Shown here: one piece after another, positions 13,720 to 53,319 of the stretch
Layout: each line of letters starts with the position of its first letter
Position numbering within the stretch: position 1 is the first letter of the stretch
From: Octopus bimaculoides
Taxonomy: Eukaryota
Length of the DNA: 54,106 bases
Direction of reading: 5' to 3'
NCBI RefSeq assembly: GCF_001194135.2
Contig: NC_068983.1
Location: 75,800,498-75,854,603, forward strand
Translations under genes and position numbers: made by a program
Notes under the pieces: generated by a model
What the model saw: the letters and a program-made list of their open reading frames with translations, nothing else
Databases searched by the model: none
Told to the model about the DNA's origin: nothing

Positions 13720-15510
13720 TCTATTTCTCTTGTCATGCTTCATCCACTGCTTGGCAAAAGTCGTTTCCAACTTTATGGCTAGTGTAGCAACATTATTATC
13801 AACTGCTACAAAGATAAAGGTGACACCATAGACAAACATATCTATAAAGATATCAAATTTCTGCACCAGGTGATGAAAGTTACAGAGGTCATAGCTCAAC
13901 TTATTAGAAAGAGAGTTAATCTAGATGAGATGCGGTTTGGTCTTATGCCAGGGAAAAGCACTACTGACGCTATATTCCTAGTAAGGTAGCTGCTGATGTA
14001 CTTAATCGAAAATAAACTTATGTACTTGGCTTTTGTTGATATGGAGAAAACCTTTGACAGGGTCCCTCGCTCCCTTATGTGTGGTCAATACAGAAGTTAG
14101 GGATAGACGAGTGGTTGCTAAGAACTGTGCAAGCCATGTACAGCAATGAATTCAGTGTGCATGTAGGAGTTCACCAAGGTTGGTTCTCAGCCCTCTCTTT
14201 TTCATTATAGTCCTCCAGGCCATAACAGGGGATTTAAGACGAGCCGTCCTTGGGATCTCCTCTATGCTGATGACCTTGCTCTTATAACTGAATTGCTACC
14301 TGGATTACAGAAGAAATTTCAGGCGTAGAAGCAAGGTTTGGAATCAAAGGGCCTTAGAGTTAATTTAGCAACGACCAAAGTCTTAGTTAGCAGGAAAACA
14401 GACAAATCACAAATCAATTCAGGGAGATGGTCCTGCTCGATATGAAGAAAAAGGTGTAGGTAGAAATTCCATATGGCGTACTCGGTGCAAGCTATGGACA
14501 TATAAGAGATGCAGCAGTATCAGAGGATGGTTAACGGAGAAAGTAGTCTTTGTGTGCGGCAGATGTGCACGTACAAGAAATACTAGAAATGTATAGAAAA
14601 TAGACTTCGTCAAATGCTCGGGAAGTAATAGATAACTTCCATTACCTAGGTGACCAAGTCAGTAGTAGAGGTGGATGCTCCGAGAACGTAGCTGTTAGAA
14701 TAAGAACGGGATGGGCAACGTTCAGAGAGCTCTACTTTTGTTGGTAGCAAAGGGCCTCTCCCTCAGAGTGAAAGGCATATTGTATGATGCCTGTGTGCAA
14801 ACAGCCATGCCACATGGCAGTGAGATACGGACTGTGACCGCAGAAGACATTTGGAAGCTTGAAATAAATGAAGCTAGTATGCTCCATTGGAGGTGCAATG
14901 TCAGTATGCCTGTACATCAGTGTGTCTTAAAGAAAATATTGGGTATAAGAAGCATCAAATGTACTGTGCAAGAGAGATGACTGCTCTGGTATGTGATGGT
15001 CATGTGATGTGTACGGACGAGGACAGTTGCGTAAGGAAGTGCCGGTTTCTAATTGCGAAGGGAACCTATGGAAAAGGTAGATCCATGAAGACGTGAGACG
15101 AGATGTTGAAATAAGGTCTTCGGTTTTTGAGTTTCATGGAGGCGATGACAAATGACTGCGACTTCCGGCGATTTGTTGTGCTTGAGAAGACACGTCAAGC
15201 TAAGTGAAATCGCGGTTGTGGTCAATCCTGGTGATATGTAAAAGGCACCTGCACAGGTGATACTTAAAAGGCACCTGTGACAGTGCACGTAAAGGGCACC
15301 TATGCCGGTGACACATAAAAAACACCCAGAACACTCTGTAGAGTGGTTGGTGTCAGGAAGGGGGACCAACCGTAGAAACCAAGCCAAAGCAGGTGACTGG
15401 AGCCTGGTGCAGCTCTCCGGCTTACCAGATTACCAGCTCCAGTCAAACCGTCTAACTCATGCCAGCATGGAGAACATTCGTTAAATGATAATGACGATGA
15501 TGATGATATT
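13720..15510 (+). mobile_element. 5'-truncated RTE-clade LINE, decayed reverse transcriptase and 3' end
   Basis: NCYKDKGD..., FGLMPGKSTTDAIFLVR, YLAFVDMEKTFDRVPR, GVHQG and LLYADDLAL (YADD at 14263-14274). The 3' region has ~25-nt aaaggcacc repeats, an RTE-type end (ggaagggg...accgtagaaacc...atgccagcatggagaac) and a (GAT)n tail. Confidence 0.92.
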
Positions 15511-16999: not shown

Positions 17000-19900
17000 A
17001 GAGTACGCACGAGTTGAAATACGACCAGATGTATACCCATCTGATTGGAATTTGCAACACGGGCACATCAAACGGTCTTTGTCTTCACATTTTCTAGAGC
17101 ACGCATCCTAGCTCTGACGAGGCAACTTTCATGCTTTGCGTTGAAGAATTGGTTAAGAGTCAATCTCGCACCAGCACGTCGGTCGTGATGCCTTTCCGTA
17201 GAACCTCTTCTAGGTTCTTAAATATCTCTTCCTTCGGTCTAAACTTCTGCATTGCTATTTCCTTAATAAAGCTAATCGATTCTACTATAATAGCCCTTTT
17301 CGAGGCTAGTCATCATCGGTTCTTGACGACTGACTTCCATCTACTTTCGCTTCACTAATTTACTAATCTGGACTCTGTAAATTTGGCGTGCTGGGAAAGA
17401 CATGCTCAGTTTCCAATGACCGAATCCAGATCTATGTAGCCTATCTAGCTCGAGCGTACAGATAACAAATTTATGATCTGTCTAGTAGGCCACAATAAAT
17501 TATAGATTACCTATGTTCTCTTTACCTGCTAATCTACAGAATGTTCTCCTTACCTGCTAATCTACAGAATGCTGTATTTAGATATCATCTGGGCGACCCA
17601 ATGTTGTTTGCTCATGTCCACATCGGCATTTTCGGGAAATCCAGTCGGTACCCATCAGGCAGCTGAAAACCTCTAAGCAAGTACGCGAATCTTTTGCCCC
17701 TCACCTCTTCTATTAGCTGATCTCACAAAATCCAGACGTGCATCGAAGATGATGTTCTAATCGTTCACTAGCATTAAAATGTGGGACGTTCTTTAGACGC
17801 CTGCAAAAATCTGGTTGCCTCGCTCTTGTAGGAGTGTAGGCAGCTACTAGTTTGAAGGCACCCCTTTTAGTTCTGCTTACATTCATTCCCACTAACTTAC
17901 CGACCAGGTTCTGGAAGACTCACTATATCTTGAGAACCAGGCCTTTCTAAAACACCGCTGCTACTCCAGCTCCCATTCCAGTTCCCCCCAGAGATGTGTA
18001 GATCTCAAAGTCACAAAAAAATAGGTGCCATAGAAGGTGTGTCAAAAATCGTGGCCTCGATAATGATACTAATAACTTATGACTTGTGGTCATTGAGTAA
18101 GCGCCTCTACTTCTAGGGTGACTCAAGGCTACATGCATGCATTTATGCAACCCACTCTTAAAACCGCTATGTTGGTAGGAAGAAAAAGGGAAGAAGAGAA
18201 GACAGTCATATACCTTCATGGTTTTGCTGTAGGCAATCGGATACATCAAAATACCTTCTCAGTGTGAGGTCCCTTGAAGAAACTCTGACGTAACCTTTTC
18301 GAGACCGAACGCTTGTGTTCCCAATGTCACGCGTGTAACTCTAACATATTTCCTTACATCTTTCTACCGGCAGCTTTACGAATCTTAGGTCCCTTGGGAC
18401 TTTCATTGTGCTTTTATTGAATGCTCTCCTCTTTGGCTCTATGTCTCCATTTTCTGCTATGTAAGACTGCAGATCTTTAGTATTTCTCTTACTAACACTA
18501 AGGTGGATGTGGGTGCAATTTGTTATTGTTGTGTGTGAATTTGTATATTTAGTAGATGCTTTTGTTTCAGTTATTGTTGAGTTTGTGGATTTGCTATATT
18601 TTTCTCTAGTGTCCTTTGTTTTGTTTGTGTATTTTCTTTTTGTTGCTGTTATTGAAGATGGTGGTAGTGAGGGTGTACTTGTGTTTGTAGATTTTTACAT
18701 TGTTTGAGATCAATGTGTAGTTAGTGTTGTTTTGAGTTTTGCTTTTTTATTTTTGATTATTTTCAGATTTTTTTTTGCTTCTCTTCCCACCCAGGCTTCT
18801 CTTCCCACCCCCGCTTCTCAGCACGAGACTCCAACTCGAATGTGGAAAAGGACCTGTTTTCTCTTGTGTGTGCATGTCTGAGTTTGTGTATGTAAGAGGG
18901 GTGGGGAATATGGACAGAAAAAGAGAAAGAGCTGCGTTGGGATGTTCTCGGAGGGCGATTATTATTTTATATTCATTATTTGTCTTCAAATAGGCGTAGG
19001 AGTGGCTGTGTGGTAAGTAGCTTGCTTACCAACCACATGGTCCCGGGTTCAGTCCCACTGCGTAGCATCTTGGGCAAGTGTCTTCTACTATAGCCTCGGG
19101 CCGACCAAAGCCTTGTGAGTGGATTTGGTAGACGGAAACTGAAAGAAGCCCGTCGTATATATGTATATATATATATGTATGTGTGTGTGTGTTTGTGTGT
19201 CTGCGTTTGTCCCCCCAACATCGCTTGACAACCGATGCTGGTGTGTTTACGTCCCCGTAACTTAGCGCTTCGGCAAAAGAGACCGATAGAATAAGTACTA
19301 GGCTTCCAAAGAATAAGTCCTGGGGTCGATTTGCTCGACTAAAAGGCGGTGCTCCAGCATGGCTACAGTCAAATGACTGAAACAAGTAAAAGAGTAAAAG
19401 AGTAAAGAGTACCTCAGTTGCTTCTGCCGATGGATTTTATGTTGATATCTTATTGCTGTTGTTGTTGCTGTTACAGATGTTATTATTATAATTTCTTTCC
19501 CCCACTTGCTTCTACTGTTGCTACTGCTGCTATTGTTGTTCATCGTTGGTGTTGCAGTGCTGGTATTGGCAGCAGTGGTGGGGTTCAAATTTCCCCTTTT
19601 ATGTTTTGATTGTGTGGGTAGAACATCCTGAGATGGTCAACTGCTCTACAGGCGTGGTAATTTGGTCGTATGAACTCCACAATTACTTTTAATTTAATTC
19701 CATCCGACTAAGAGGTGATGTCTGGGTTTCTTTTCTATATGCTCAGGCTTTACATGGAGTATCTCTGGTGTGGTACCAAACTAGTTTTTCTTGCTTCGAT
19801 CTCTTCACTTCCAATAGTGTTTCGCTTCCTTCCAACACTATGTATACCAATATCTGTAAGAGATCTAGCTCTGGTGGGACCCCCGGTATTGTTACCTTTG

Positions 19901-20350: not shown

Positions 20351-20475
20351 AGTATTGATTTCAGTCATAATCATTCCATCTTTTTGAAAGAATGTGACGA
20401 CTTAGATTACACTGTGTAACACGATTTTTGCCCTTGAGTAGCAACTGTTATTTCCTGTTTGCTTACCCCTTGAAA

Positions 20476-20858
20476 GTGGAGGCGCAATGGCCCAGTGGTT
20501 AGGGTAGCGGACTCGCGGTCGTAGGATCGCGGTTTCGATTCCCAGACCGGGTGTTGTGAGTGTTTATTGAGCGAAAACACATAAAACTCCACAAGGCTCC
20601 GGCAGGTGATGGTGGTGAACCCTGCTGTACTCTTCCACCACAATTTTCTCTCACTCTTTCTTCCTGTTTCTGTTGTACCTGTATTTAAAATGGGCCAGCC
20701 TTCTCACACTGTGTCACGCTGAATATCCCCGAGAACTATTTTAAGGGTATACGTGTCTGTGGAGTGCTCAGCCACTTGCACGTTAATTTTACGAGCAGGC
20801 TGTTCCGTTGATTGGATCAACTAGAACCCTCGACGTCGTAAGCGACAGAGTGCCAACA
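20476..20858 (+). mobile_element. tRNA-derived SINE family C, full length with TSD
   Basis: Head ggaggcgcaatggcccagtggttaggg...gtttcgattccc and a caacaac tail. 11-bp TSD accccttgaaa at 20465-20475 and 20859-20869. Confidence 0.93.
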
Positions 20859-20919
20859 ACCCCTTGAAAATATGAAAAATAACTAATATATCCTTCAAAC
20901 TTTGCTTTTGTTACATTTT

Positions 20920-25972: not shown

Positions 25973-26258
25973 AGGAGTGACTGTGTGGTAAGTAGCTTGT
26001 TTACCAACCACATGGCTCTAGGTTCAGTCCCACTGCGCTAAAACCTTGGGTAAGTGTCTTCTACTATAGCCTCGGGCCGACGAATGCCTTGTGAGCGGAT
26101 TTGGTAGACGGAAACTGAAAGAAGCCCGTCGTATATATGTATATATATGTATGTGTGTGTATAGGTTTGTGTGTCTTTGTTTGTCCCCCAACATCGCTTG
26201 ACAACCGATGGTGGTGTGTTTACGTCCAGGTAACTTAGCGATTCGGCAAAAATGATCG
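25973..26258 (+). mobile_element. SINE family A, 3'-truncated
   Basis: Matches the 18992 copy from the head to ...gatag, then switches to family E sequence. Confidence 0.9.
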
Positions 26259-26343
26259 ATAGACGGGCAGTCATGATGGGTATACTGGGCTTCATATATT
26301 TTACCCCAGTGTCACTTTGGTGGCATGCGCTGCTTTCTCACTC
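26259..26343 (+). mobile_element. 3' terminal fragment of repeat family E with (AAC)/(AAT) tail
   Basis: Matches 26925-27009 (gtcatgatgggtata.tgggcttc.tatatttt.ccccagtgtcacttt...tctcactc). Confidence 0.8.
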
Positions 26344-42984: not shown

Positions 42985-43156
42985 CTTCATGTTTTGCGTT
43001 CTGATTTCAAATGCTGTCGTGGCCGACTTTGCCTTTCATCCTAACGAAGCCGATAAGATAAGTGCCATTTGAGCACTGGGGACGATGTTACAACTAATCC
43101 CTTCCCAAAGTCTCAGGCCTATAGTGGAAAGGATTATTATTATTATTATTATTATT
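42985..43156 (+). mobile_element. SINE family B with (ATT)n tail
   Basis: gttctgatttcaaatgctgtcgtggccgactttgcctttcatcc...gagcactggggacgatg...gaaagg(att)n. A more decayed copy lies at ~42725-42900. Confidence 0.75.
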
Positions 43157-43484
43157 GTTCAGTAGTTTTATTTTTATACCGTGCTTCCACTTCACTACCG
43201 AGCGCAGCTCTGTGCGCCTTGGGTATGTGCTGTGGTTTGCTGTGGTACTCTTATGTTTACTGTATTGAAAGTGTTTTGCGTAGAATGTGTGCAGTACCCA
43301 GTAGTGCAATTTTCTGTATGTTATATATATTTGTAAGTCCTGGTGTTTTTGTTATGTATTTGTCTGAATATTTTTTTATTATACCTAAGGCACCTACTAT
43401 GATAGGAATTGTTTCTGTTTTTAGATTCCACATTCGAGTTATCTCTATTTCCAGGTCTTTGTATTTTGAAAGTTTTTCCATTTC

Positions 43485-44024: not shown

Positions 44025-44135
44025 CTTTAGGTGTTTTCGCTCAATAAACACTCACAACACCCGGTCTGGGAATCGAAACTGCGATCCTACGACCGCGAAT
44101 CTGCTGCCCCAACCACTGGGCCATTGCGCATCCAC
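44025..44135 (-). mobile_element. SINE family C 5' fragment
   Basis: Reverse complement of the first ~110 bp of the 20476 copy. Confidence 0.9.
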
Positions 44136-44454
44136 TTCTACACATACAAACATGCACATATTCACATAAACACGAAGTCAAACATGTGCACACACCACAC
44201 ATACACATGACATATACATACACACACAACAACTTTTTACTTACAAAATCCTATATAATCACTAAGCCGAGGATATTCAGTTTTTTTTCTCAAATTGATA
44301 TTGTCCAACCGCTCATACAGATTAAAGCAAGACGATTATTTCTTGTCTGAATTTTTTGTTTTTCTTCACTGCTGACGTTAATATCTGTGGAATTTAAAGT
44401 TTGATTGGTCACGTTCCATTTCAGTCAACTTATCCACGGTTTCATATTTATTCA

Positions 44455-44670
44455 GTGGAGGCGCAATGGCCCAGTGGCTAGGGCAGCGGACTCGCGGTCG
44501 GAGGATCGCGGTTTTGATTCCCAAACCGGGCGTTGTGTGTGTTTATTGAGCGAAAACACCTAAAGCTCCACGAGGCACCGGCAGGGGGTGGTGGCGACCC
44601 CTGTTGTACTCTATCGCCCCAACTTTCTCTCACTCTTTCTTCCTGTTTCTTGAGTAAAAAGCTGCGATGA
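44455..44670 (+). mobile_element. SINE family C, short form
   Basis: gtggaggcgcaatggcccagtggctagggcagcggactcgcggtcgg...ctctttcttcctgtttctt. Confidence 0.9.
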
Positions 44671-46570: not shown

Positions 46571-48568
46571 TAAATATGTTTGCTTGTTCATGGCCGATTT
46601 GTGGATAAATAACAAACCCATTTAGCATAATTTTCCTTTTAATCAATCTCTCTTTGTCGCTTTTCCAAGACATTTAGCTCAACAATCTTTTGCCTTATTT
46701 GTTGTCTACGCAGAGCTGTCATTCTAGAACCTTCGAAAAAATCAACGCTTTCTTTTCATTTATTAAAGATCTATTAACATTGCAATATTCAAATTGAATA
46801 TCAACACACACAGACTTTACCTATCAACAGGTTTCTTTAACATAGAAGACAATGAAATATTAATGCTTACTGTCTCACTTCTTTTGACTAAGAGATAAGA
46901 AATAGCTTTGTAATTTCTTTCAGACGTCACCCGTTATATAATTTATTATATTCTCAATTTCTTTATTCATTAATATTCTGTTTTCACCGTCTCGATCTGT
47001 TATTACAGTTTTTCAATATTCTTTTCCTAGTTTAATACCTTTTGTCTTGTTGATATCTTACTTGACATTATCATATGACCTATCTCATAGGTCGTAGACA
47101 TATTATATCGAATCCTGCACTGAGACTCTTCTCATTGATTTGAAATAAAATCGAAAATGTGCTTCGTCTGTCCTACAAATCAATAATTAATTTGACCACT
47201 GCACGAACCACTGAAGACGTAATATCTAATTAATTTGGGAACCTACAAGAGATAAGAAAATCAATGAGATTGGATTGTATCGGTTGAAATGAGATAAGAG
47301 TACACAAGAAAAAGTTTGTTCGAATAAAAAGAAAATTAAAATGACTAAATACTTGTTTTGTGAAGGAGAGCACATAACAGATAACTGATTACGGTGGATC
47401 ACTGTTAGGTACTTTATCATCAAACAGAGAGGTGAAAACAGTAAAGACCATGAACTTAGTAAGGTCCAATAAGGTTAGACAACGAATCTGAAACAGTAGA
47501 GTATTAGGATGTGCACTCTTATCCTTACTGATCTATATTATTGCACGTACGTTGATATAAATTTCTTTCTGTTGAAAGTGGTCCTTGTTTACTCGACATA
47601 ATATACAGATATAAAGTTACGACTGTATGTGATCAAAGAACATTCAACTCAGAGGATCCAATTCTTCATTAATCAATCCAGTAACCTCTTCTGTCAGACA
47701 TTGCTATCATATTTTTGAAGACCAATTATAATTGCTTTCAATTTCACCAAAACCTGAAACGCAGAATATAATATCACTAAATGAAAGTAAGCGTATAGAC
47801 TTCAAGAAGATGACAGGTTATTTTCTTTCATTCAAGAACAAATTCTAATTTAACTGTTCCACGTATGGTGGTGAAATAATTGAAGAATAAACTAGGAACA
47901 AACGATGGCGCCTTGTGTAAATGTGGGTGCATCACTTGTTAAAATTAGTAGCTGAATTCCTTCAAATCATGTCCTGTCTAAAATGATAAAATGGGCCAGG
48001 TAGTCTTTGATATATGTCTGAAAAAAGGAAGGAGCTTCGAGGCTGGAACACTTTTAGTCATAGTTCTGATATGAAGCTAAAGATAAAAAGTAATCGTTTT
48101 CTTCTTTATTGTTGAGCTAAGAATATATATCACCAGATATAGGCGAAAATCTAACTCGTTAAAGTAGATGACGCTTGTTTTCAAACAGAGCATTTTAATC
48201 TTCAAATAACTACTTACGTTTTAAAAATGAAAGCTCATTAGATAATGTGGTCCTAAATACACCTTACCTGAAGAAAAAAAAAAAAGACTGAATGATCACT
48301 GATGGAAGGCCTTTGATTATAGATTTGTTCTGCTCCATTTGATTTGATCATGAGCTGAAAAAATTGTCGACTGTTGTTAAGGTACTGGATTTCTTTTTTA
48401 AGATTTGTGAGAGCAAATTTGTTGCAGTCATTTTTCTTGTGATGCTGGATAGGATAATTAGTGTTACATTACTCTTCAGATCTAATTATACGGAATTGTC
48501 TGTGTATGAGTTTGTGTGTGTGTGCGTGTATCTTGGCAGACGAGAATCGTCTGCTACGGGCGCCGGAA

Positions 48569-48608
48569 CTGCAAGCTCGCGTGATTTCGCTCTATCCGGG
48601 CTCTTCAG
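48569..48608 (-). ncRNA. Degenerate hammerhead ribozyme paralogue (probably inactive)
   Basis: Minus strand reads CTGAAGA-GCC-CGGATAG-AGC-GAAA-TC-ACGC-GA-G-C-TTGCAG, with the same spacing as the 48896 copy. U16.1 is changed to G and a 12-nt insertion disrupts stem I. Confidence 0.65.
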
Positions 48609-48895
48609 CTCTGGTGCACTTAGCAGACAAGAATCTTCAGTCAGTCAACGATATAAATATGAATGTTTTATGCACCATGCATCGATATGAGAGGGCCTCT
48701 CAAGGTAAATATCACAGTATTCGGTGTCCTAACACAACATCCACGTTATGTTGGATATAAAGATTGCCTTTTGGTATTAATACTGTTTTTGTCGCAGTTA
48801 ATTATTTTTAAATAAGCTTGCTGGCTATTTGTGTCATCGGACTCTGAAATTCTATATATTGCTGACAGTGAGATTCGGCTGTCGCTACCAGACGT

Positions 48896-48941
48896 CTGCC
48901 ACTGAAGAACCAGAGCAGGGTGAAATCACGCGATCTGGCAG
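48896..48941 (+). ncRNA. Type I hammerhead ribozyme motif (minimal, retrozyme/Penelope-like)
   Basis: Stem I CTGCCA(48896-901)/TGGCAG(48936-41). Core CTGAAGA(48902-08). Stem II ACC/GGT with 7-nt loop AGAGCAG. GAAA(48922-25). Stem III ATC/GAT with loop ACGC. Cleavage triplet AUC (C17=48935). All conserved hammerhead core positions are present in the correct order. Confidence 0.85.
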
Positions 48942-49103
48942 TTTCAGCTCCCGTATCGGACGAGAATAATCTGCCAACGATATAAATTGGGAGCATTTAT
49001 GCACTATGCATCTGAATGAGAGGTCCTTTCAATGCAAATAGCGCAGTATTTGGTGTTCCAACACACCACCCACGTTAAGTTGTATATACAAATTGCCTTT
49101 TGC

Positions 49104-49106
<3 letters not shown>

Positions 49107-49156
<50 letters not shown>

Positions 49157-49246
49157 CAATATCTATCAATCAATCAATCAATCAATCAATCAACCAATCA
49201 ATCAATCAATCANNNNNNNNNNTCAATCAATCAATCAATCAATCTA

Positions 49247-50423: not shown

Positions 50424-50760
50424 GGCACCTTGGGCTAGTGTCTTCTACTATAGCCTCGGGCTGACCAAAGCTTTGTGAGTGGATTTGGTAGACGGAAACT
50501 GAAAGAAGCCCGTCGTATATATGTATATGTATATATATATATATGTGTGTTTGTGTGTCTGTGTTTGTCCCCCCAACATCACTTGACAGCCGATGCTGGT
50601 GTGTTTACGTCCCCGTAACTTAGCGGTTCGGCAAAAGAGACCGATAGAATAAGTACTAGGCTTACAAAGAATAAGTCCTGGGGTCGATTTGCTCGACTAA
50701 AGGTGGTGCTCTAGCATGGCCACAGTCAAATGACTGAAACAAGTAAAAGAGTAAAAAGAG
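50424..50760 (+). mobile_element. SINE family A (head lost in N-gap)
   Basis: Close match to 19065-19405. Confidence 0.92.
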
Positions 50761-51420
50761 TATATACATGCATACATACATGCATACATACTGACGAAGA
50801 GCATGGCTAAATAATTTATATGTCATACATGATCATCGTATGGATACAAGAAAAAATATGTAAGATATTCTTAAAATCTGAAGGGTGGAGGATGATTGTT
50901 CAAAAAGAAAAAAAAGGCAACCATGTTTTTACTTAAACATCTTTCCTTTAAAATATTCATACTATTGAATAGCGACAATTCATATTATTGAATAGTTTTA
51001 TAAAATGCAGGCAAGATTACATATCACAAGAAACAACGATGTTTTCTAGAATCATACTTTTATTTCATGAACATCTGAAAAACATTTTGTTAATTAGAAG
51101 AACGTAAGTATATTCACCTATTTTAATTTTTAAGCATTTATTGTTTACATCCACATTGTCTTGAGTCACCATCTTTACTGAGGGACTCACGATACGTAAA
51201 AAGAGCAAATTCTTCAGTTTACATGGTGACCTTCTTTCAACTATTGTCGTTTGGAAAGCACAAAAAAGCATAACATGAAATTCTTCACCTCCACGTAAGT
51301 GGAAGATTTAAATGCATGACATAACAACACAACCATTGTGATCATCAAGAAAATACTCGATGGTGTAGCACTATCAGCTGTACGAGTCATTCTTTAACCT
51401 CAAATCTGCTATAATAGAGC

Positions 51421-51812
51421 TGTTGTTGTTGTTGTTGGCACTCCGTCACTTACGACGTCGAGGGTTCCAGTTGATCCGATCAACGGAACAGCCTGCTCGT
51501 GAAATTAACGTGCAAGTGGTTGAGCACTCCACAGACACGTGTATTCTTAACGTAGTTCTCGGGGATATTCAGCGTGACACAGTGTGACAAGGCTGGCCCT
51601 TTGAATTGCAGGCACAACAGAAACAGGAAGTAAGAGTGAGAGAAAGTTGTGGTGAAAGAGTACAGCAGGGTTCGCCACTATCCTCTGCCGGAGCCTCGTG
51701 GAGCTTTGGGTGTTTTCGCTCAATAAACACTCACAACGCCCGGTCTGGGGATCGAAACCGCGATTATGTGACCGCGAGTCCGCTGCCCTAACCGCTGGGC
51801 CATTGCGCCTCC
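51421..51812 (-). mobile_element. SINE family C, full length with TSD
   Basis: Reverse complement of the 20476 copy with a (CAA)n tail. 13-bp TSD gctataatagagc at 51408-51420 and 51813-51825. Confidence 0.93.
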
Positions 51813-53319
51813 GCTATAATAGAGCACACATAAGTTAAAAAGATGTCTTGCTATGGCTTTCCGTCTTATTGTTTAACATACCGTATCTAGGACTAGCTCA
51901 TCCTTCATATGTTAATTCTTTTTAAGCAGATAGACTGTGATTTAGGGGACATATCTGTCACGGGTTGAGAAACTACACAGAGACCCTCTCGCAGGCTCGT
52001 TTTTGTTGTTGTCAAACTGCAGGTAATCCCTCGAAAAGCGTTCCAGTGGAGACCAAACTTTTATGGAGAAGAGTGTATTTATGACGACAGCGTGTGATTT
52101 GATAGCAGTATCGCAGCCAATTTGAACGATCACTTAAAGACATTTAGCTGTGTGAGAAGTATTAAAATCTGTATAGGCATCAGTGGATTAGCTAGAACTG
52201 ACATCTATTTACATGAGTAGAGTAATTAATAACACACTATCTCGAGACTGTCCATAATATCGAATAAATCACAATTACTAGATTTACTACGGATCTGGAC
52301 AATTATCTAAATTAGTGCTAGTTAATTCAGCGGAGAATTTGCTTCATCTAATTTCAGAGTGCTCTTCTGAGTACAACGAAAAATATCTTTTAAAGGAACG
52401 ACATCGATATAACGAATTCATTTATATATAATGATTCCATGGTGACACAGACATAACTGATGCACTCTGCGTACATTTACTGTCATTTGCACGTGCAGAC
52501 TGTTATGGTTTAACGAACAGGTCCAGTTAAATTTAGCACGTTGTTAGGCAAACTCTACCTTGCTGTTGCTTTGTGAGGATAAAGAAATAGTTGTTTTTGA
52601 GGAGTACCTTTTAAGAAGAACCATTACTGAATGTAAAACTTTCTAGAGCAGGGGAGCTTGTAACGCAATCACTCGACTGGCTTGAAATAGCAGTCAAATC
52701 TTTTTCGTATTATATTTATCATTAAAAGGACACATTAGATAACGTAGTCTTGGTTATAAAAAAAAACAAAAAACAAACAAACAAACAAACAAAAATAAAT
52801 AAATAAATAAGCTATGAGACGTTCAAGAATGGGTCATCTGTGGTCATAGAACTACTTTTACAAGGTCATTTTGAACAACGGCCACAACAACAACAACACT
52901 GACTGAAACGGTTAGGTACACTTCTCGAGACTACATAGTAGCTAATACAGGCCTCCAGAGAACATCTGAACACTGACTTTGGCTGTTAACTGTTGTTGTT
53001 GTTGTTGTTGTTCTTTTTCTTTTTCTTCTTCTTTATCTCCAGGGCAGCTCTGATTGAACAGATCTATCACGAAACGAATTCAAGCCATGACCCCCCGTCT
53101 ATTTAAGAGTATGTATGACTACATTACAAAATCCAACAAATCTCTTCTTTTCGTAAGACAGTCAGGGGAGATTTGGAAGAAAGTCGTTTTCTATTTCTAA
53201 CAGGTCGAATGATCAAACAGAAACTCCCTCGCTGGTTGTTACCAGGAGGCAAATTTAGCAGTTATTACATGTTTTTTTGCAAGAAGTGTCTAACTTCTGA
53301 AGATATTGAAGGCATTCGT

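What the first reader, a model, noticed from the sequence alone, without database searches (positions are those of the whole stretch)
48896..48941. Complete type I hammerhead ribozyme in non-coding DNA
Seen: CTGCCA-CTGAAGA-ACC-AGAGCAG-GGT-GAAA-TC-ACGC-GA-TC-TGGCAG, i.e. the full CUGANGA/GAAA/NUH core, a perfect 6-bp stem I and short stems II and III. Established: minimal type I hammerheads with short stem III occur in Penelope-like elements and metazoan retrozymes, often cleave as dimers, and can yield small circular RNAs. Inference: this is a self-cleaving RNA from a retrozyme or PLE-derived family, cutting after C48935. No PLE RT or GIY-YIG coding sequence is visible nearby, so it would be non-autonomous. 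I cannot tell whether this family is already described.
Basis: partly seen in the sequence, partly recalled or inferred. Interest (0 to 1): 0.85.

Follow-up and report, generated by a model that had tools for sequence, protein, structure and literature searches.

The report
Minimal hammerhead motif in retroelement relic
The 46-base stretch is a formally complete small hammerhead (self-cutting RNA) motif that sits in what looks like an old, broken copy of a Penelope-type jumping element; this is a common kind of thing in invertebrate-like genomes and probably an inactive fossil here.

Summary
Window 48896-48941 (+) reads as a complete minimal type I hammerhead: 6-bp helix I, CUGAAGA, 3-bp helix II, GAAA, 3-bp helix III, AUC, with the cut between C48935 and U48936. 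It is the only such match in the window. Chance expectation is about 1e-5 per window for my descriptor. A covariance model built only from four experimentally cleaving animal retrozyme hammerheads ranks it first (21.5 bits, E~6e-4).

The motif lies in a ~645-bp composite: an inverted partial copy, then a 1.5-unit direct tandem (329-nt unit), with (CA)n facing outward at both ends. This is the published layout of Penelope-like-element (PLE) insertions.

Several points weaken the claim:
- Rfam hammerhead models give no hit, even at E<=10.
- The hammerhead fold (-7.7 kcal/mol) loses to another fold (-12.3).
- The pairs flanking the core are atypical (A10.1-U11.1 and U15.2-A16.2, giving AUC).
- The only paralogue has lost U16.1 and helix I.
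- Helix I reuses a palindromic motif that recurs in the element.
- There is no second same-strand hammerhead, so this locus cannot make circles.
- No relatives could be retrieved elsewhere.

Verdict: probably a genuine PLE/retrozyme-type hammerhead relic. It is a new member of a known kind, of modest interest.

The parts
48896..48941 (+). Minimal type I hammerhead motif. Helix I 48896-901/48936-941; core CUGAAGA 48902-908; helix II 48909-911/48919-921 with loop 48912-918; GAA 48922-924; helix III 48925-927/48932-934 with loop ACGC; C17 at 48935; predicted cut between 48935 and 48936.
   Evidence: Sequence. Only descriptor hit in the window. Top hit of model R1, 21.5 bits, E~6e-4, model positions 1-44. 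No Rfam hit.
48861..48975 (+). HH2 module: left arm (hairpin GACAG...CTGTC), the hammerhead, and a right arm ending in TCTGCCAA. It is 55% GC, against about 33% for the surroundings.
   Evidence: Aligns at 75% to the reverse complement of 48529-48608. GC content.
48529..48650 (-). HH1 module: an inverted, degenerate paralogue. It keeps CTGAAGA, GAAA and TCACGCGA. It has G at 16.1, lacks the 8 nt (CGTCTGCC) that supply the helix I 5' strand, and its helix II is reduced to G-C and C-G.
   Evidence: Alignment A1. blastn E=2e-9, inverted orientation only. Model R1 gives only 6.5 bits. Arm hairpin GCAGACGA/TCGTCTGC.
48646..48777 (+). B1 module, first copy of the direct repeat.
   Evidence: 80% identical to 48975-49106, start-to-start spacing 329 nt.
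48778..48860 (+). AT-rich spacer (29% GC) between B1 and the HH2 module. Together with B and HH it makes the 329-nt unit.
48975..49106 (+). B2 module, second copy of the direct repeat; it runs directly into (CA)21.
48505..48531 (+). Imperfect (TG)n at the left edge. On the minus strand this is a (CA)n following the HH1 module: ...TCTGCCAA GATA CACGCACACACAC.
49107..49149 (+). (CA)21 at the right edge, followed by (ATCA)n, a 9-N assembly gap and (ATCT)n up to about 49345.

Best explanation
The locus (about 48505-49149) is a relic of a Penelope-like-element-type retroelement insertion. It is either the 3'/pseudo-LTR end of a heavily 5'-truncated PLE or a short non-autonomous, retrozyme-like passenger mobilised by PLE enzymes.

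Shown: a partial direct tandem (B1-spacer-HH2-B2, unit 329 nt) is preceded by an inverted partial copy (HH1), and (CA)n faces outward at both ends. The plus-strand copy carries a formally complete minimal type I hammerhead.

Inferred mechanism: in a plus-strand transcript, helices I-III would assemble around the CUGAAGA/GAA core. The 2'-OH of C48935 would attack its 3' phosphate, leaving a 2',3'-cyclic phosphate on C48935 and a 5'-OH on U48936. In the parent family this would trim or unit-size multimeric element RNA. The head-to-head layout would come from cDNA synthesis primed on both cleaved target strands, as shown in vitro for a PLE protein.

At this particular locus the ribozyme is probably weak or silent, and the locus is a fossil, for four reasons. 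Helices II and III are marginal. A competing fold hides the cleavage site. There is no second same-strand hammerhead to form a dimer or to release a unit-length RNA. The copies differ by 20-25%.
For: (1) The descriptor match is perfect and unique in the window, with chance about 1e-5 per window.

(2) Model R1 was built without the candidate from coral, mussel and two axolotl retrozyme hammerheads that cleave in vitro. It ranks 48896-48941 first over both strands with filters off: 21.5 bits, E~6e-4, full length. The next hit scores 11.7 bits.

(3) The motif fits CUGANGA/GAAAY/RUH. Like all four validated examples, it has A2.1-U1.1 and C2.2-G1.2 at the base of a 6-bp helix I.

(4) The paralogue HH1 keeps CUGAAGA-N13-GAAA-UCACGCGA intact and shows an A-U to G-C double change at 10.1/11.1.

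(5) The layout matches published PLE signatures:
- partial tandems forming pseudo-LTRs, an adjacent inverted 5'-truncated copy, microsatellite bias including (CA)n, and a hammerhead in the pseudo-LTR;
- pairs of min-hammerheads 100-700 bp apart on opposite strands;
- a PLE protein that cleaves and extends both strands and initiates reverse transcription internally.

(6) The unit size of 329 nt and GC of 41% fall within the range of animal non-LTR retrozymes.

(7) The in-register dimer helix III scores -5.1 kcal/mol, similar to the validated axolotl Ax330 (-4.6).
Against: - No Rfam hammerhead family matches at gathering score, or at E<=10 on 1.2 kb or on 81 nt.
- The hammerhead fold is -7.7 kcal/mol against an MFE of -12.3, an ensemble share of about 1e-4. 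The MFE pairs CCAGA with UCUGG across the cleavage site.
- Hairpin III alone is +1.1 kcal/mol.
- The 10.1-11.1 pair is A-U, whereas G-C is 'highly conserved' in PLE hammerheads. There is no extra base after A9, helix II is 3 bp rather than 6-8, and loop 3 is only a near-palindrome.
- The AUC triplet was reported as essentially absent from natural hammerheads, though catalytically competent.
- HH1 has G16.1 and no helix I. The hammerhead region diverges about as much as its flanks do.
- Helix I depends on an 8-nt indel and on a palindromic motif that recurs in the element.
- The minus-strand copy lacks a B module, which the simple 'inverted 5'-truncated copy' model does not predict.
- The unit RNA is no more structured than shuffled sequence (z = -0.44).
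- No further copies occur in the window. No relatives were found in any searchable collection.
Confidence: 0.6

Rival explanations
1. Chance hammerhead look-alike. The element is an unrelated low-copy repeat (SINE-like, or a local inverted/tandem duplication) rich in the palindromic motif TGGCAGAC...GTCTGCCA. One copy happens to complete the hammerhead consensus, and no ribozyme ever functioned in this lineage.
For: - No Rfam hit.
- Helix I comes 'for free' from a motif present 4 times in 611 bp, and needs an 8-nt indel absent from the paralogue.
- Without helix I, the descriptor is expected about 0.03 times per window and hundreds of times per Gb-scale genome.
- The pairs next to the core are atypical.
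- The hammerhead fold is disfavoured.
- Conservation of 11 of 12 core positions in the paralogue is not significant at 75% background identity (my estimate, P about 0.16).
Against: - The full descriptor is expected only about 1e-5 times per window.
- The independent covariance model gives E~6e-4.
- The identity of the two base pairs at the foot of helix I matches all four validated retrozyme hammerheads.
- The PLE-like tandem/inverted/microsatellite layout is independent evidence.
- True hammerheads number in the thousands in many animal genomes, so the prior favours a real one.
Confidence: 0.22
2. Active non-LTR retrozyme locus. The 329-nt repeat is transcribed, cut by tandem hammerheads, ligated into a small circular RNA, and copied back into the genome.
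For: Unit length (329 nt), GC content (41%) and the type I hammerhead fit the published retrozyme description. There is a direct repeat of the unit.
Against: - There is only one complete hammerhead. The neighbouring one is on the other strand and is defective, so the published criterion of >=2 consecutive units with complete motifs is not met.
- The unit RNA is not unusually self-paired (z = -0.44).
- The repeat copies are 20% diverged.
- The array holds only about 1.5 units.
Confidence: 0.07
3. Host-exapted single hammerhead, for example an intronic or UTR ribozyme acting on a host transcript, like the conserved amniote hammerheads.
For: It is a solitary complete motif. Isolated hammerheads with proposed mRNA roles exist (introduction of PMC7229834).
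Against: - It sits inside a repeat flanked by microsatellites, with no exon evidence nearby.
- No orthologous conservation could be tested.
- It does not match the Rfam HH9/HH10 families.
Confidence: 0.03

Closest known systems
Type I hammerheads of animal non-LTR retrozymes (Cervera & de la Pena 2020, PMC7229834), e.g. mussel Mg353: GCGUCA CUGAUGA GUCU UUUGU AGAC GAAA C GCGC G UC / UGGCGU
   Same: The topology and sizes match: a 6-bp open helix I starting U1.1-A2.1 and G1.2-C2.2, a short helix II with a 5-7-nt loop, and a 2-3-bp helix III with a 4-nt CG-rich loop. The repeat unit is about 330 nt and has low GC. A model built from these sequences scores the candidate at 21.5 bits.
   Different: - It has A10.1-U11.1 and U15.2-A16.2 (AUC) instead of G-C and C-G (GUC).
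- Loop 3 is not a perfect palindrome.
- It is not in a same-strand multimer.
- The unit RNA is not strongly self-paired.
- There is no sequence similarity outside the motif.
Minimal hammerheads in the pseudo-LTRs of Penelope-like elements (Cervera & de la Pena 2014, PMC4209133; Craig et al. 2021, PMC8557442)
   Same: Both are small type I motifs with a weak helix III, and mostly occur as solitary motifs from truncated copies. Pairs occur a few hundred bp apart on opposite strands. Insertions are partial tandems with an adjacent inverted copy and are associated with microsatellites.
   Different: PLE min-hammerheads typically have a long helix II (6-8 bp), an extra base after A9, a conserved G10.1-C11.1 pair and a palindromic 15.2-16.2/loop 3. 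None of these is fully met here. No RT/GIY-YIG ORF is attached.
Rfam Hammerhead_1 (RF00163) and the hammerhead clan
   Same: The core boxes and the three-helix junction are the same by inspection.
   Different: There is no match at gathering score or at E<=10, so it is not a member by Rfam's criterion.
Satellite/SINE-borne hammerheads of newts, schistosomes (Sm-alpha) and cave crickets (cited in PMC7229834; details are from my own knowledge)
   Same: All are type I hammerheads carried by short, non-coding, repeated elements of a few hundred bp. The weak helix III implies that they act as dimers.
   Different: Those families are high-copy, occur as same-strand tandems or carry pol III promoters, and have loop 1-loop 2 contacts. 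Here ARAGORN found no tRNA-like head, no tertiary contact can be identified, and there are only two local copies.

Membership tests
Hammerhead ribozyme, type I | Catalytic core C3 U4 G5 A6 N7 G8 A9 / G12 A13 A14 | tested here: met
   CUGAAGA at 48902-08 and GAA at 48922-24.
Hammerhead ribozyme, type I | A15.1-U16.1 pair followed by H17 (the RUH triplet), with the cleavage site at the start of the helix I 3' strand | tested here: met
   A48925-U48934, C48935; triplet AUC. AUC is rare in natural hammerheads but catalytically competent.
Hammerhead ribozyme, type I | Three helices around the core, with helix I open-ended | tested here: met
   6/3/3 Watson-Crick pairs. However, this fold is -7.7 kcal/mol against an MFE of -12.3.
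Hammerhead ribozyme, type I | G10.1-C11.1 closing pair of helix II | tested here: not met
   The pair is A-U here; the paralogue has G-C. It is described as highly conserved.
Hammerhead ribozyme, type I | Loop 1-loop 2 tertiary contacts (canonical, fast-cleaving form) | tested here: inconclusive
   Helix I has no recognisable loop 1 or closing stem beyond its 6 bp. Only a 4-bp GCUG/CAGC pairing across a 14/3-nt asymmetric loop is possible. It is best classed as 'minimal'.
Hammerhead ribozyme, type I | Match to a curated covariance model (Rfam clan CL00010) | tested here: not met
   No hit at gathering score, or at E<=10 on 1.2 kb or on 81 nt.
Hammerhead ribozyme, type I | Match to a model of experimentally cleaving animal type I hammerheads | tested here: met
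   Model R1 (four sequences, candidate excluded): 21.5 bits, rough E~6e-4, top of the window.
Hammerhead ribozyme, type I | Mg2+-dependent site-specific self-cleavage | not testable with these tools
   Needs in vitro transcription.
Hammerhead ribozyme, type I | Core conserved and helices covarying among relatives | tested here: inconclusive
   Only one paralogue is available. It shares both core boxes and has one double change at 10.1/11.1, but has lost U16.1 and helix I. No relatives are retrievable.
Non-LTR retrozyme (animal) | Short tandem repeat unit of 150-450 bp with low GC | tested here: met
   329-nt spacing, about 1.5 units, 41% GC.
Non-LTR retrozyme (animal) | [quoted passage not shown] | tested here: not met
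   There is one complete motif. The other is inverted and defective.
Non-LTR retrozyme (animal) | Highly self-paired unit RNA | tested here: not met
   z = -0.44 against shuffles for 48646-48974.
Non-LTR retrozyme (animal) | Expressed as linear and circular RNA of unit length | not testable with these tools
   No transcriptome is available.
Penelope-like element (insertion signature) | Partial tandem (pseudo-LTR) plus an adjacent inverted 5'-truncated copy | tested here: met
   B1-spacer-HH2-B2 is a direct repeat, and HH1 is inverted immediately upstream. The inverted copy lacks B, so the fit is imperfect.
Penelope-like element (insertion signature) | Association with microsatellites such as (CA)n or (TA)n | tested here: met
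   (TG)n at 48505-31 and (CA)21 at 49107-49, both facing outward. The reference is.
Penelope-like element (autonomous) | ORF with a telomerase-like RT and a GIY-YIG endonuclease | tested here: not met
   None lies in or next to the element. ORFs >=62 aa across the window show only mariner and non-LTR-like fragments. Shorter decayed fragments were not excluded.

The most novel reading that the evidence does not exclude
The locus could represent an undescribed, lineage-specific family of PLE-mobilised mini-elements with two unusual features. First, the hammerhead would use an atypical A10.1-U11.1 / AUC core context. Second, it would sit in a GC-rich cassette between two hairpin arms (GCAGACG...CGTCTGC), so that the cassette can be found in either orientation relative to the rest of the unit. 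A (CA)n 3' tract would serve to anneal the RNA to nicked (TG)n microsatellite targets, analogous to the reverse-complement telomeric repeats next to the hammerheads of endonuclease-deficient PLEs.
Probability: 0.08. Interest if true: 0.5.

Novelty: new member of a known kind. Interest (0 to 1): 0.25.

Why it matters
If confirmed, it adds one more lineage-specific hammerhead-bearing retroelement to a class already known to hold thousands of copies in cnidarians, molluscs, flatworms, arthropods, fish, amphibians and reptiles. Its main value is practical in two ways.

First, it shows that a formally perfect minimal hammerhead with non-consensus pairs next to the core is invisible to the Rfam models, yet is recovered by a small model built from validated retrozyme ribozymes. 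Such motifs are therefore likely under-annotated.

Second, the locus is a compact example of the tandem/inverted, microsatellite-capped architecture attributed to PLE-type integration.

It does not open a new question, and this copy is probably not active.

Tried and rejected
- Rfam at gathering score and at E<=10 gave no hammerhead. The weak miRNA and SCARNA7 hits are microsatellite artefacts.
- ARAGORN found no tRNA-like SINE head.
- The element shows a partial resemblance to 5S rRNA by eye. I rejected it because it is not colinear and Rfam gives no hit.
- I looked up element ORFs as called genes; they are not on record.
- A protein-word search with the 99-aa reading frame across copy 1 found nothing.
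- Exact DNA patterns from the HH module and the B module found nothing in the metagenome, viral and prokaryote-genome collections. The source genome is evidently not in any searchable collection.
- A full HMMER search with the 62-aa minus-strand translation returned five hits. They are bacterial WD40-repeat proteins, a chance similarity inflated by repeats, so I rejected them.
- I tried to reach same-species DNA through a transposon protein. The best hit is only 52% identical, so I abandoned this route.
I replaced it with ORF lists and a Pfam scan of ten selected ORFs.
- There is no sequence similarity between the element and the mussel or coral retrozymes outside the motif.
- I rejected a MITE with terminal inverted repeats, because the two outer ends of the composite are not inverted repeats of each other.
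- I did not establish the source organism. SSR richness, Mos1-type mariner and the repeat content suggest an invertebrate. My guess of a cephalopod mollusc rests on memory only.

Full report
**1. The observation**

In standard hammerhead numbering it reads:
- helix I 5' strand CUGCCA;
- C3-A9 = CUGAAGA;
- helix II ACC/GGU closed by a 7-nt loop;
- G12-A14 = GAA;
- helix III A15.1-U16.1, U-A and C-G closed by ACGC;
- C17 = 48935;
- helix I 3' strand UGGCAG.

The predicted scissile bond lies between 48935 and 48936.

I wrote a type I descriptor and ran it over both strands. This is the only match, even with helices relaxed to 3/2/2 bp and G-U allowed. A descriptor for dimer-only 'min-HHRs', including the U3-A8 core variant, finds nothing else.

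For a chance estimate I generated 20 Mb of random sequence with the window's dinucleotide make-up. Core plus helices II and III occurred 5 times, and never together with even 2 bp of helix I. Extrapolating to six Watson-Crick pairs gives about 1e-5 expected per window, but of order one per few-Gb genome. For this window the motif is far beyond chance. For a scan of very many windows it would not be sufficient on its own.

**2. Model-based tests**

Rfam 15 gives no hammerhead hit at gathering thresholds over the whole window. It also gives none at E<=10 on 1.2 kb or on 81 nt.

As an independent test I took four animal retrozyme hammerheads shown to self-cleave: coral Amil224, mussel Mg353, and axolotl Ax353 and Ax330. 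Their sequences come from Supplementary Table 2 of PMC7229834. I aligned them and built a covariance model that does not include the candidate. With filters off, the model's best hit in the window is 48896-48941 (+), full length, at 21.5 bits and a rough E of 6e-4. The next hit is a partial match at 11.7 bits.

The candidate also fits the consensus CUGANGA/GAAAY/RUH used by those authors. Like all four references, it has A2.1-U1.1 and C2.2-G1.2 at the foot of a 6-bp helix I.

The likely reason for the Rfam miss is that the two pairs flanking the core are non-consensus. The candidate has A10.1-U11.1 instead of G-C, and U15.2-A16.2 instead of C-G. The resulting triplet is AUC, which Carbonell et al. 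describe as essentially absent from natural hammerheads although catalytically competent.

**3. Folding**

The hammerhead fold of the 46-mer is worth -7.7 kcal/mol, against an MFE of -12.3. Its ensemble share is about 1e-4, and the whole sequence is not unusually stable (z = -0.99). The favoured fold pairs CCAGA (in loop 2, or upstream at 48888) with UCUGG across the cleavage site. Hairpin III alone is +1.1 kcal/mol.

An in-register intermolecular helix III, as in dimeric hammerheads, is worth -5.1 kcal/mol with two A.C mismatches. That is comparable to axolotl Ax330 (-4.6) but much weaker than coral or mussel (about -13). If active at all, the motif should behave like the weak, dimer-dependent minimal hammerheads described for PLEs.

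**4. Surroundings**

The window is eukaryotic and repeat-rich:
- 88 tandem-repeat rows and about 33% GC;
- assembly gaps totalling 3020 N;
- Mos1-type mariner fragments;
- several interspersed repeat families.

The hammerhead belongs to a local composite of about 645 bp.
- A 132-bp 'B' module occurs twice in direct orientation (48646-48777 and 48975-49106), 80% identical and 329 nt apart.
- The GC-rich 'HH' module carrying the motif (48861-48975, +) has a 75%-identical copy in inverted orientation at 48529-48650.
- Each HH module is bounded by hairpin-like arms of the type GCAGACG...CGTCTGC.
- The plus-strand order is (TG)n | HH1 (inverted) | B1 | spacer | HH2 | B2 | (CA)21, so both outer ends carry (CA)n pointing outward.
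- No further copy exists in the window.

**5. The paralogue**

HH1 retains CUGAAGA, GAAA and the helix III/loop 3 block UCACGCGA. At 10.1/11.1 it has G-C where HH2 has A-U, a double and compensatory difference.

However, HH1 has G at 16.1, a broken third pair in helix II, and lacks the 8 nt (CGTCTGCC) that supply the helix I 5' strand in HH2. Model R1 gives it only 6.5 bits.

Divergence inside the hammerhead region is about the same as in the flanks. Sharing 11 of 12 core positions is not significant at 75% background identity.

Helix I of HH2 is also not independent evidence. TGGCAG/CTGCCA is a recurring motif of the element, found 4 times against 0.3 expected. TGGCAG at 48936 has an alternative partner at 48971, a pairing that also exists in HH1.

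**6. Interpretation**

The architecture is what the literature describes for Penelope-like-element integration:
- high 5' truncation, partial tandems that create pseudo-LTRs, an inverted 5'-truncated copy immediately adjacent, microsatellite association including (CA)n, and hammerheads in the pseudo-LTR (Craig et al. 2021);
- pairs of minimal hammerheads 100-700 bp apart on opposite strands, with most motifs solitary and derived from truncated elements (Cervera & de la Pena 2014);
- a PLE protein that cleaves and extends both target strands and starts reverse transcription internally (Frangieh et al. 2024).

Unit size (329 nt) and GC content (41%) also fit animal non-LTR retrozymes, now argued to be PLE derivatives.

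Against the simple model, the inverted copy runs from its right arm straight into GATA(CA)n without a B module.

Against an active retrozyme, there are not two consecutive same-strand hammerheads (criterion). The unit RNA is also no more structured than shuffles (z = -0.44).

No RT or GIY-YIG coding capacity is in or near the element. I cannot distinguish a 5'-truncated autonomous PLE end from a dedicated non-autonomous family with the sequence available.

**7. What could not be done**

Every route to relatives failed:
- exact-protein look-ups;
- a word-indexed protein search;
- DNA patterns in the metagenome, viral and prokaryotic collections;
- a full HMMER search, whose only hits were bacterial WD40 proteins, a chance match.

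A transposon protein from the window finds nothing closer than 52% identity. The source genome is therefore not represented in the searchable collections. The organism remains unidentified. Family-level conservation and covariation, the decisive computational test, remain open.

**8. Verdict**

- Most likely (about 0.6): a genuine but atypical minimal type I hammerhead in a decayed PLE-type or retrozyme-like insertion, catalytically weak at best and unable to yield circles from this locus.
- About 0.2: a chance completion of the consensus inside a palindrome-rich repeat.
- The remainder is spread over the other readings.

If real, it is a new member of a well-known kind. Interest is modest.

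Noticed in passing
window 10576-10962 (-) and 32799-33161 (+): Mos1-type mariner transposase fragments (Pfam Transposase_1, E=5e-11; HTH_48, E=9e-9). 10252-10515 and 10896-11173 are inverted copies of each other (79%).
   Followed up: partly
window 32411-32816: A 406-bp stretch that is its own reverse complement at 82% (a long palindrome or fold-back), directly upstream of the mariner HTH fragment.
   Followed up: no
window 173-291, 6000-6800, 18998-19404, 25973-26263, 31536-31887 (-), 50424-50763: An interspersed repeat family of about 340 bp (up to 94% identity between copies), each copy next to TA/CA-type simple repeats. It is probably a SINE-like element.
   Followed up: no
window 20474-20860, 44025-44137, 44454-44650, 51431-51815: A second interspersed family of about 390 bp (88-94% identity). 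Its translation has a tRNA-like look by eye, but ARAGORN and Rfam report nothing.
   Followed up: no
window 38523-38783 vs 43133-43393; 31886-32023 vs 39946-40083: Two near-identical inverted pairs (97% and 98.6%), much younger than the other repeats. The first pair brackets about 4.3 kb.
   Followed up: no
window ~13300-15400 and 27600-28120: ORF fragments that resemble non-LTR reverse transcriptase (YADDLAL motif, by eye) and an RT C-terminal region. Pfam gives no hit. The latter is 52% identical to an unnamed database protein (P0001).
   Followed up: partly
window 49214-49222 and other N runs (3020 N in total): Assembly gaps. One lies inside the (ATCA)n/(ATCT)n run immediately downstream of the element, so the right flank of the insertion is not fully resolved.
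   Followed up: no
window 48808-48996 (-), 62-aa translation: The translation over the hammerhead region gives E=1e-12 to 2e-5 against bacterial WD40-repeat proteins, with 6-7 matched stretches each. This is a chance similarity inflated by the repeats, not homology.
   Followed up: yes
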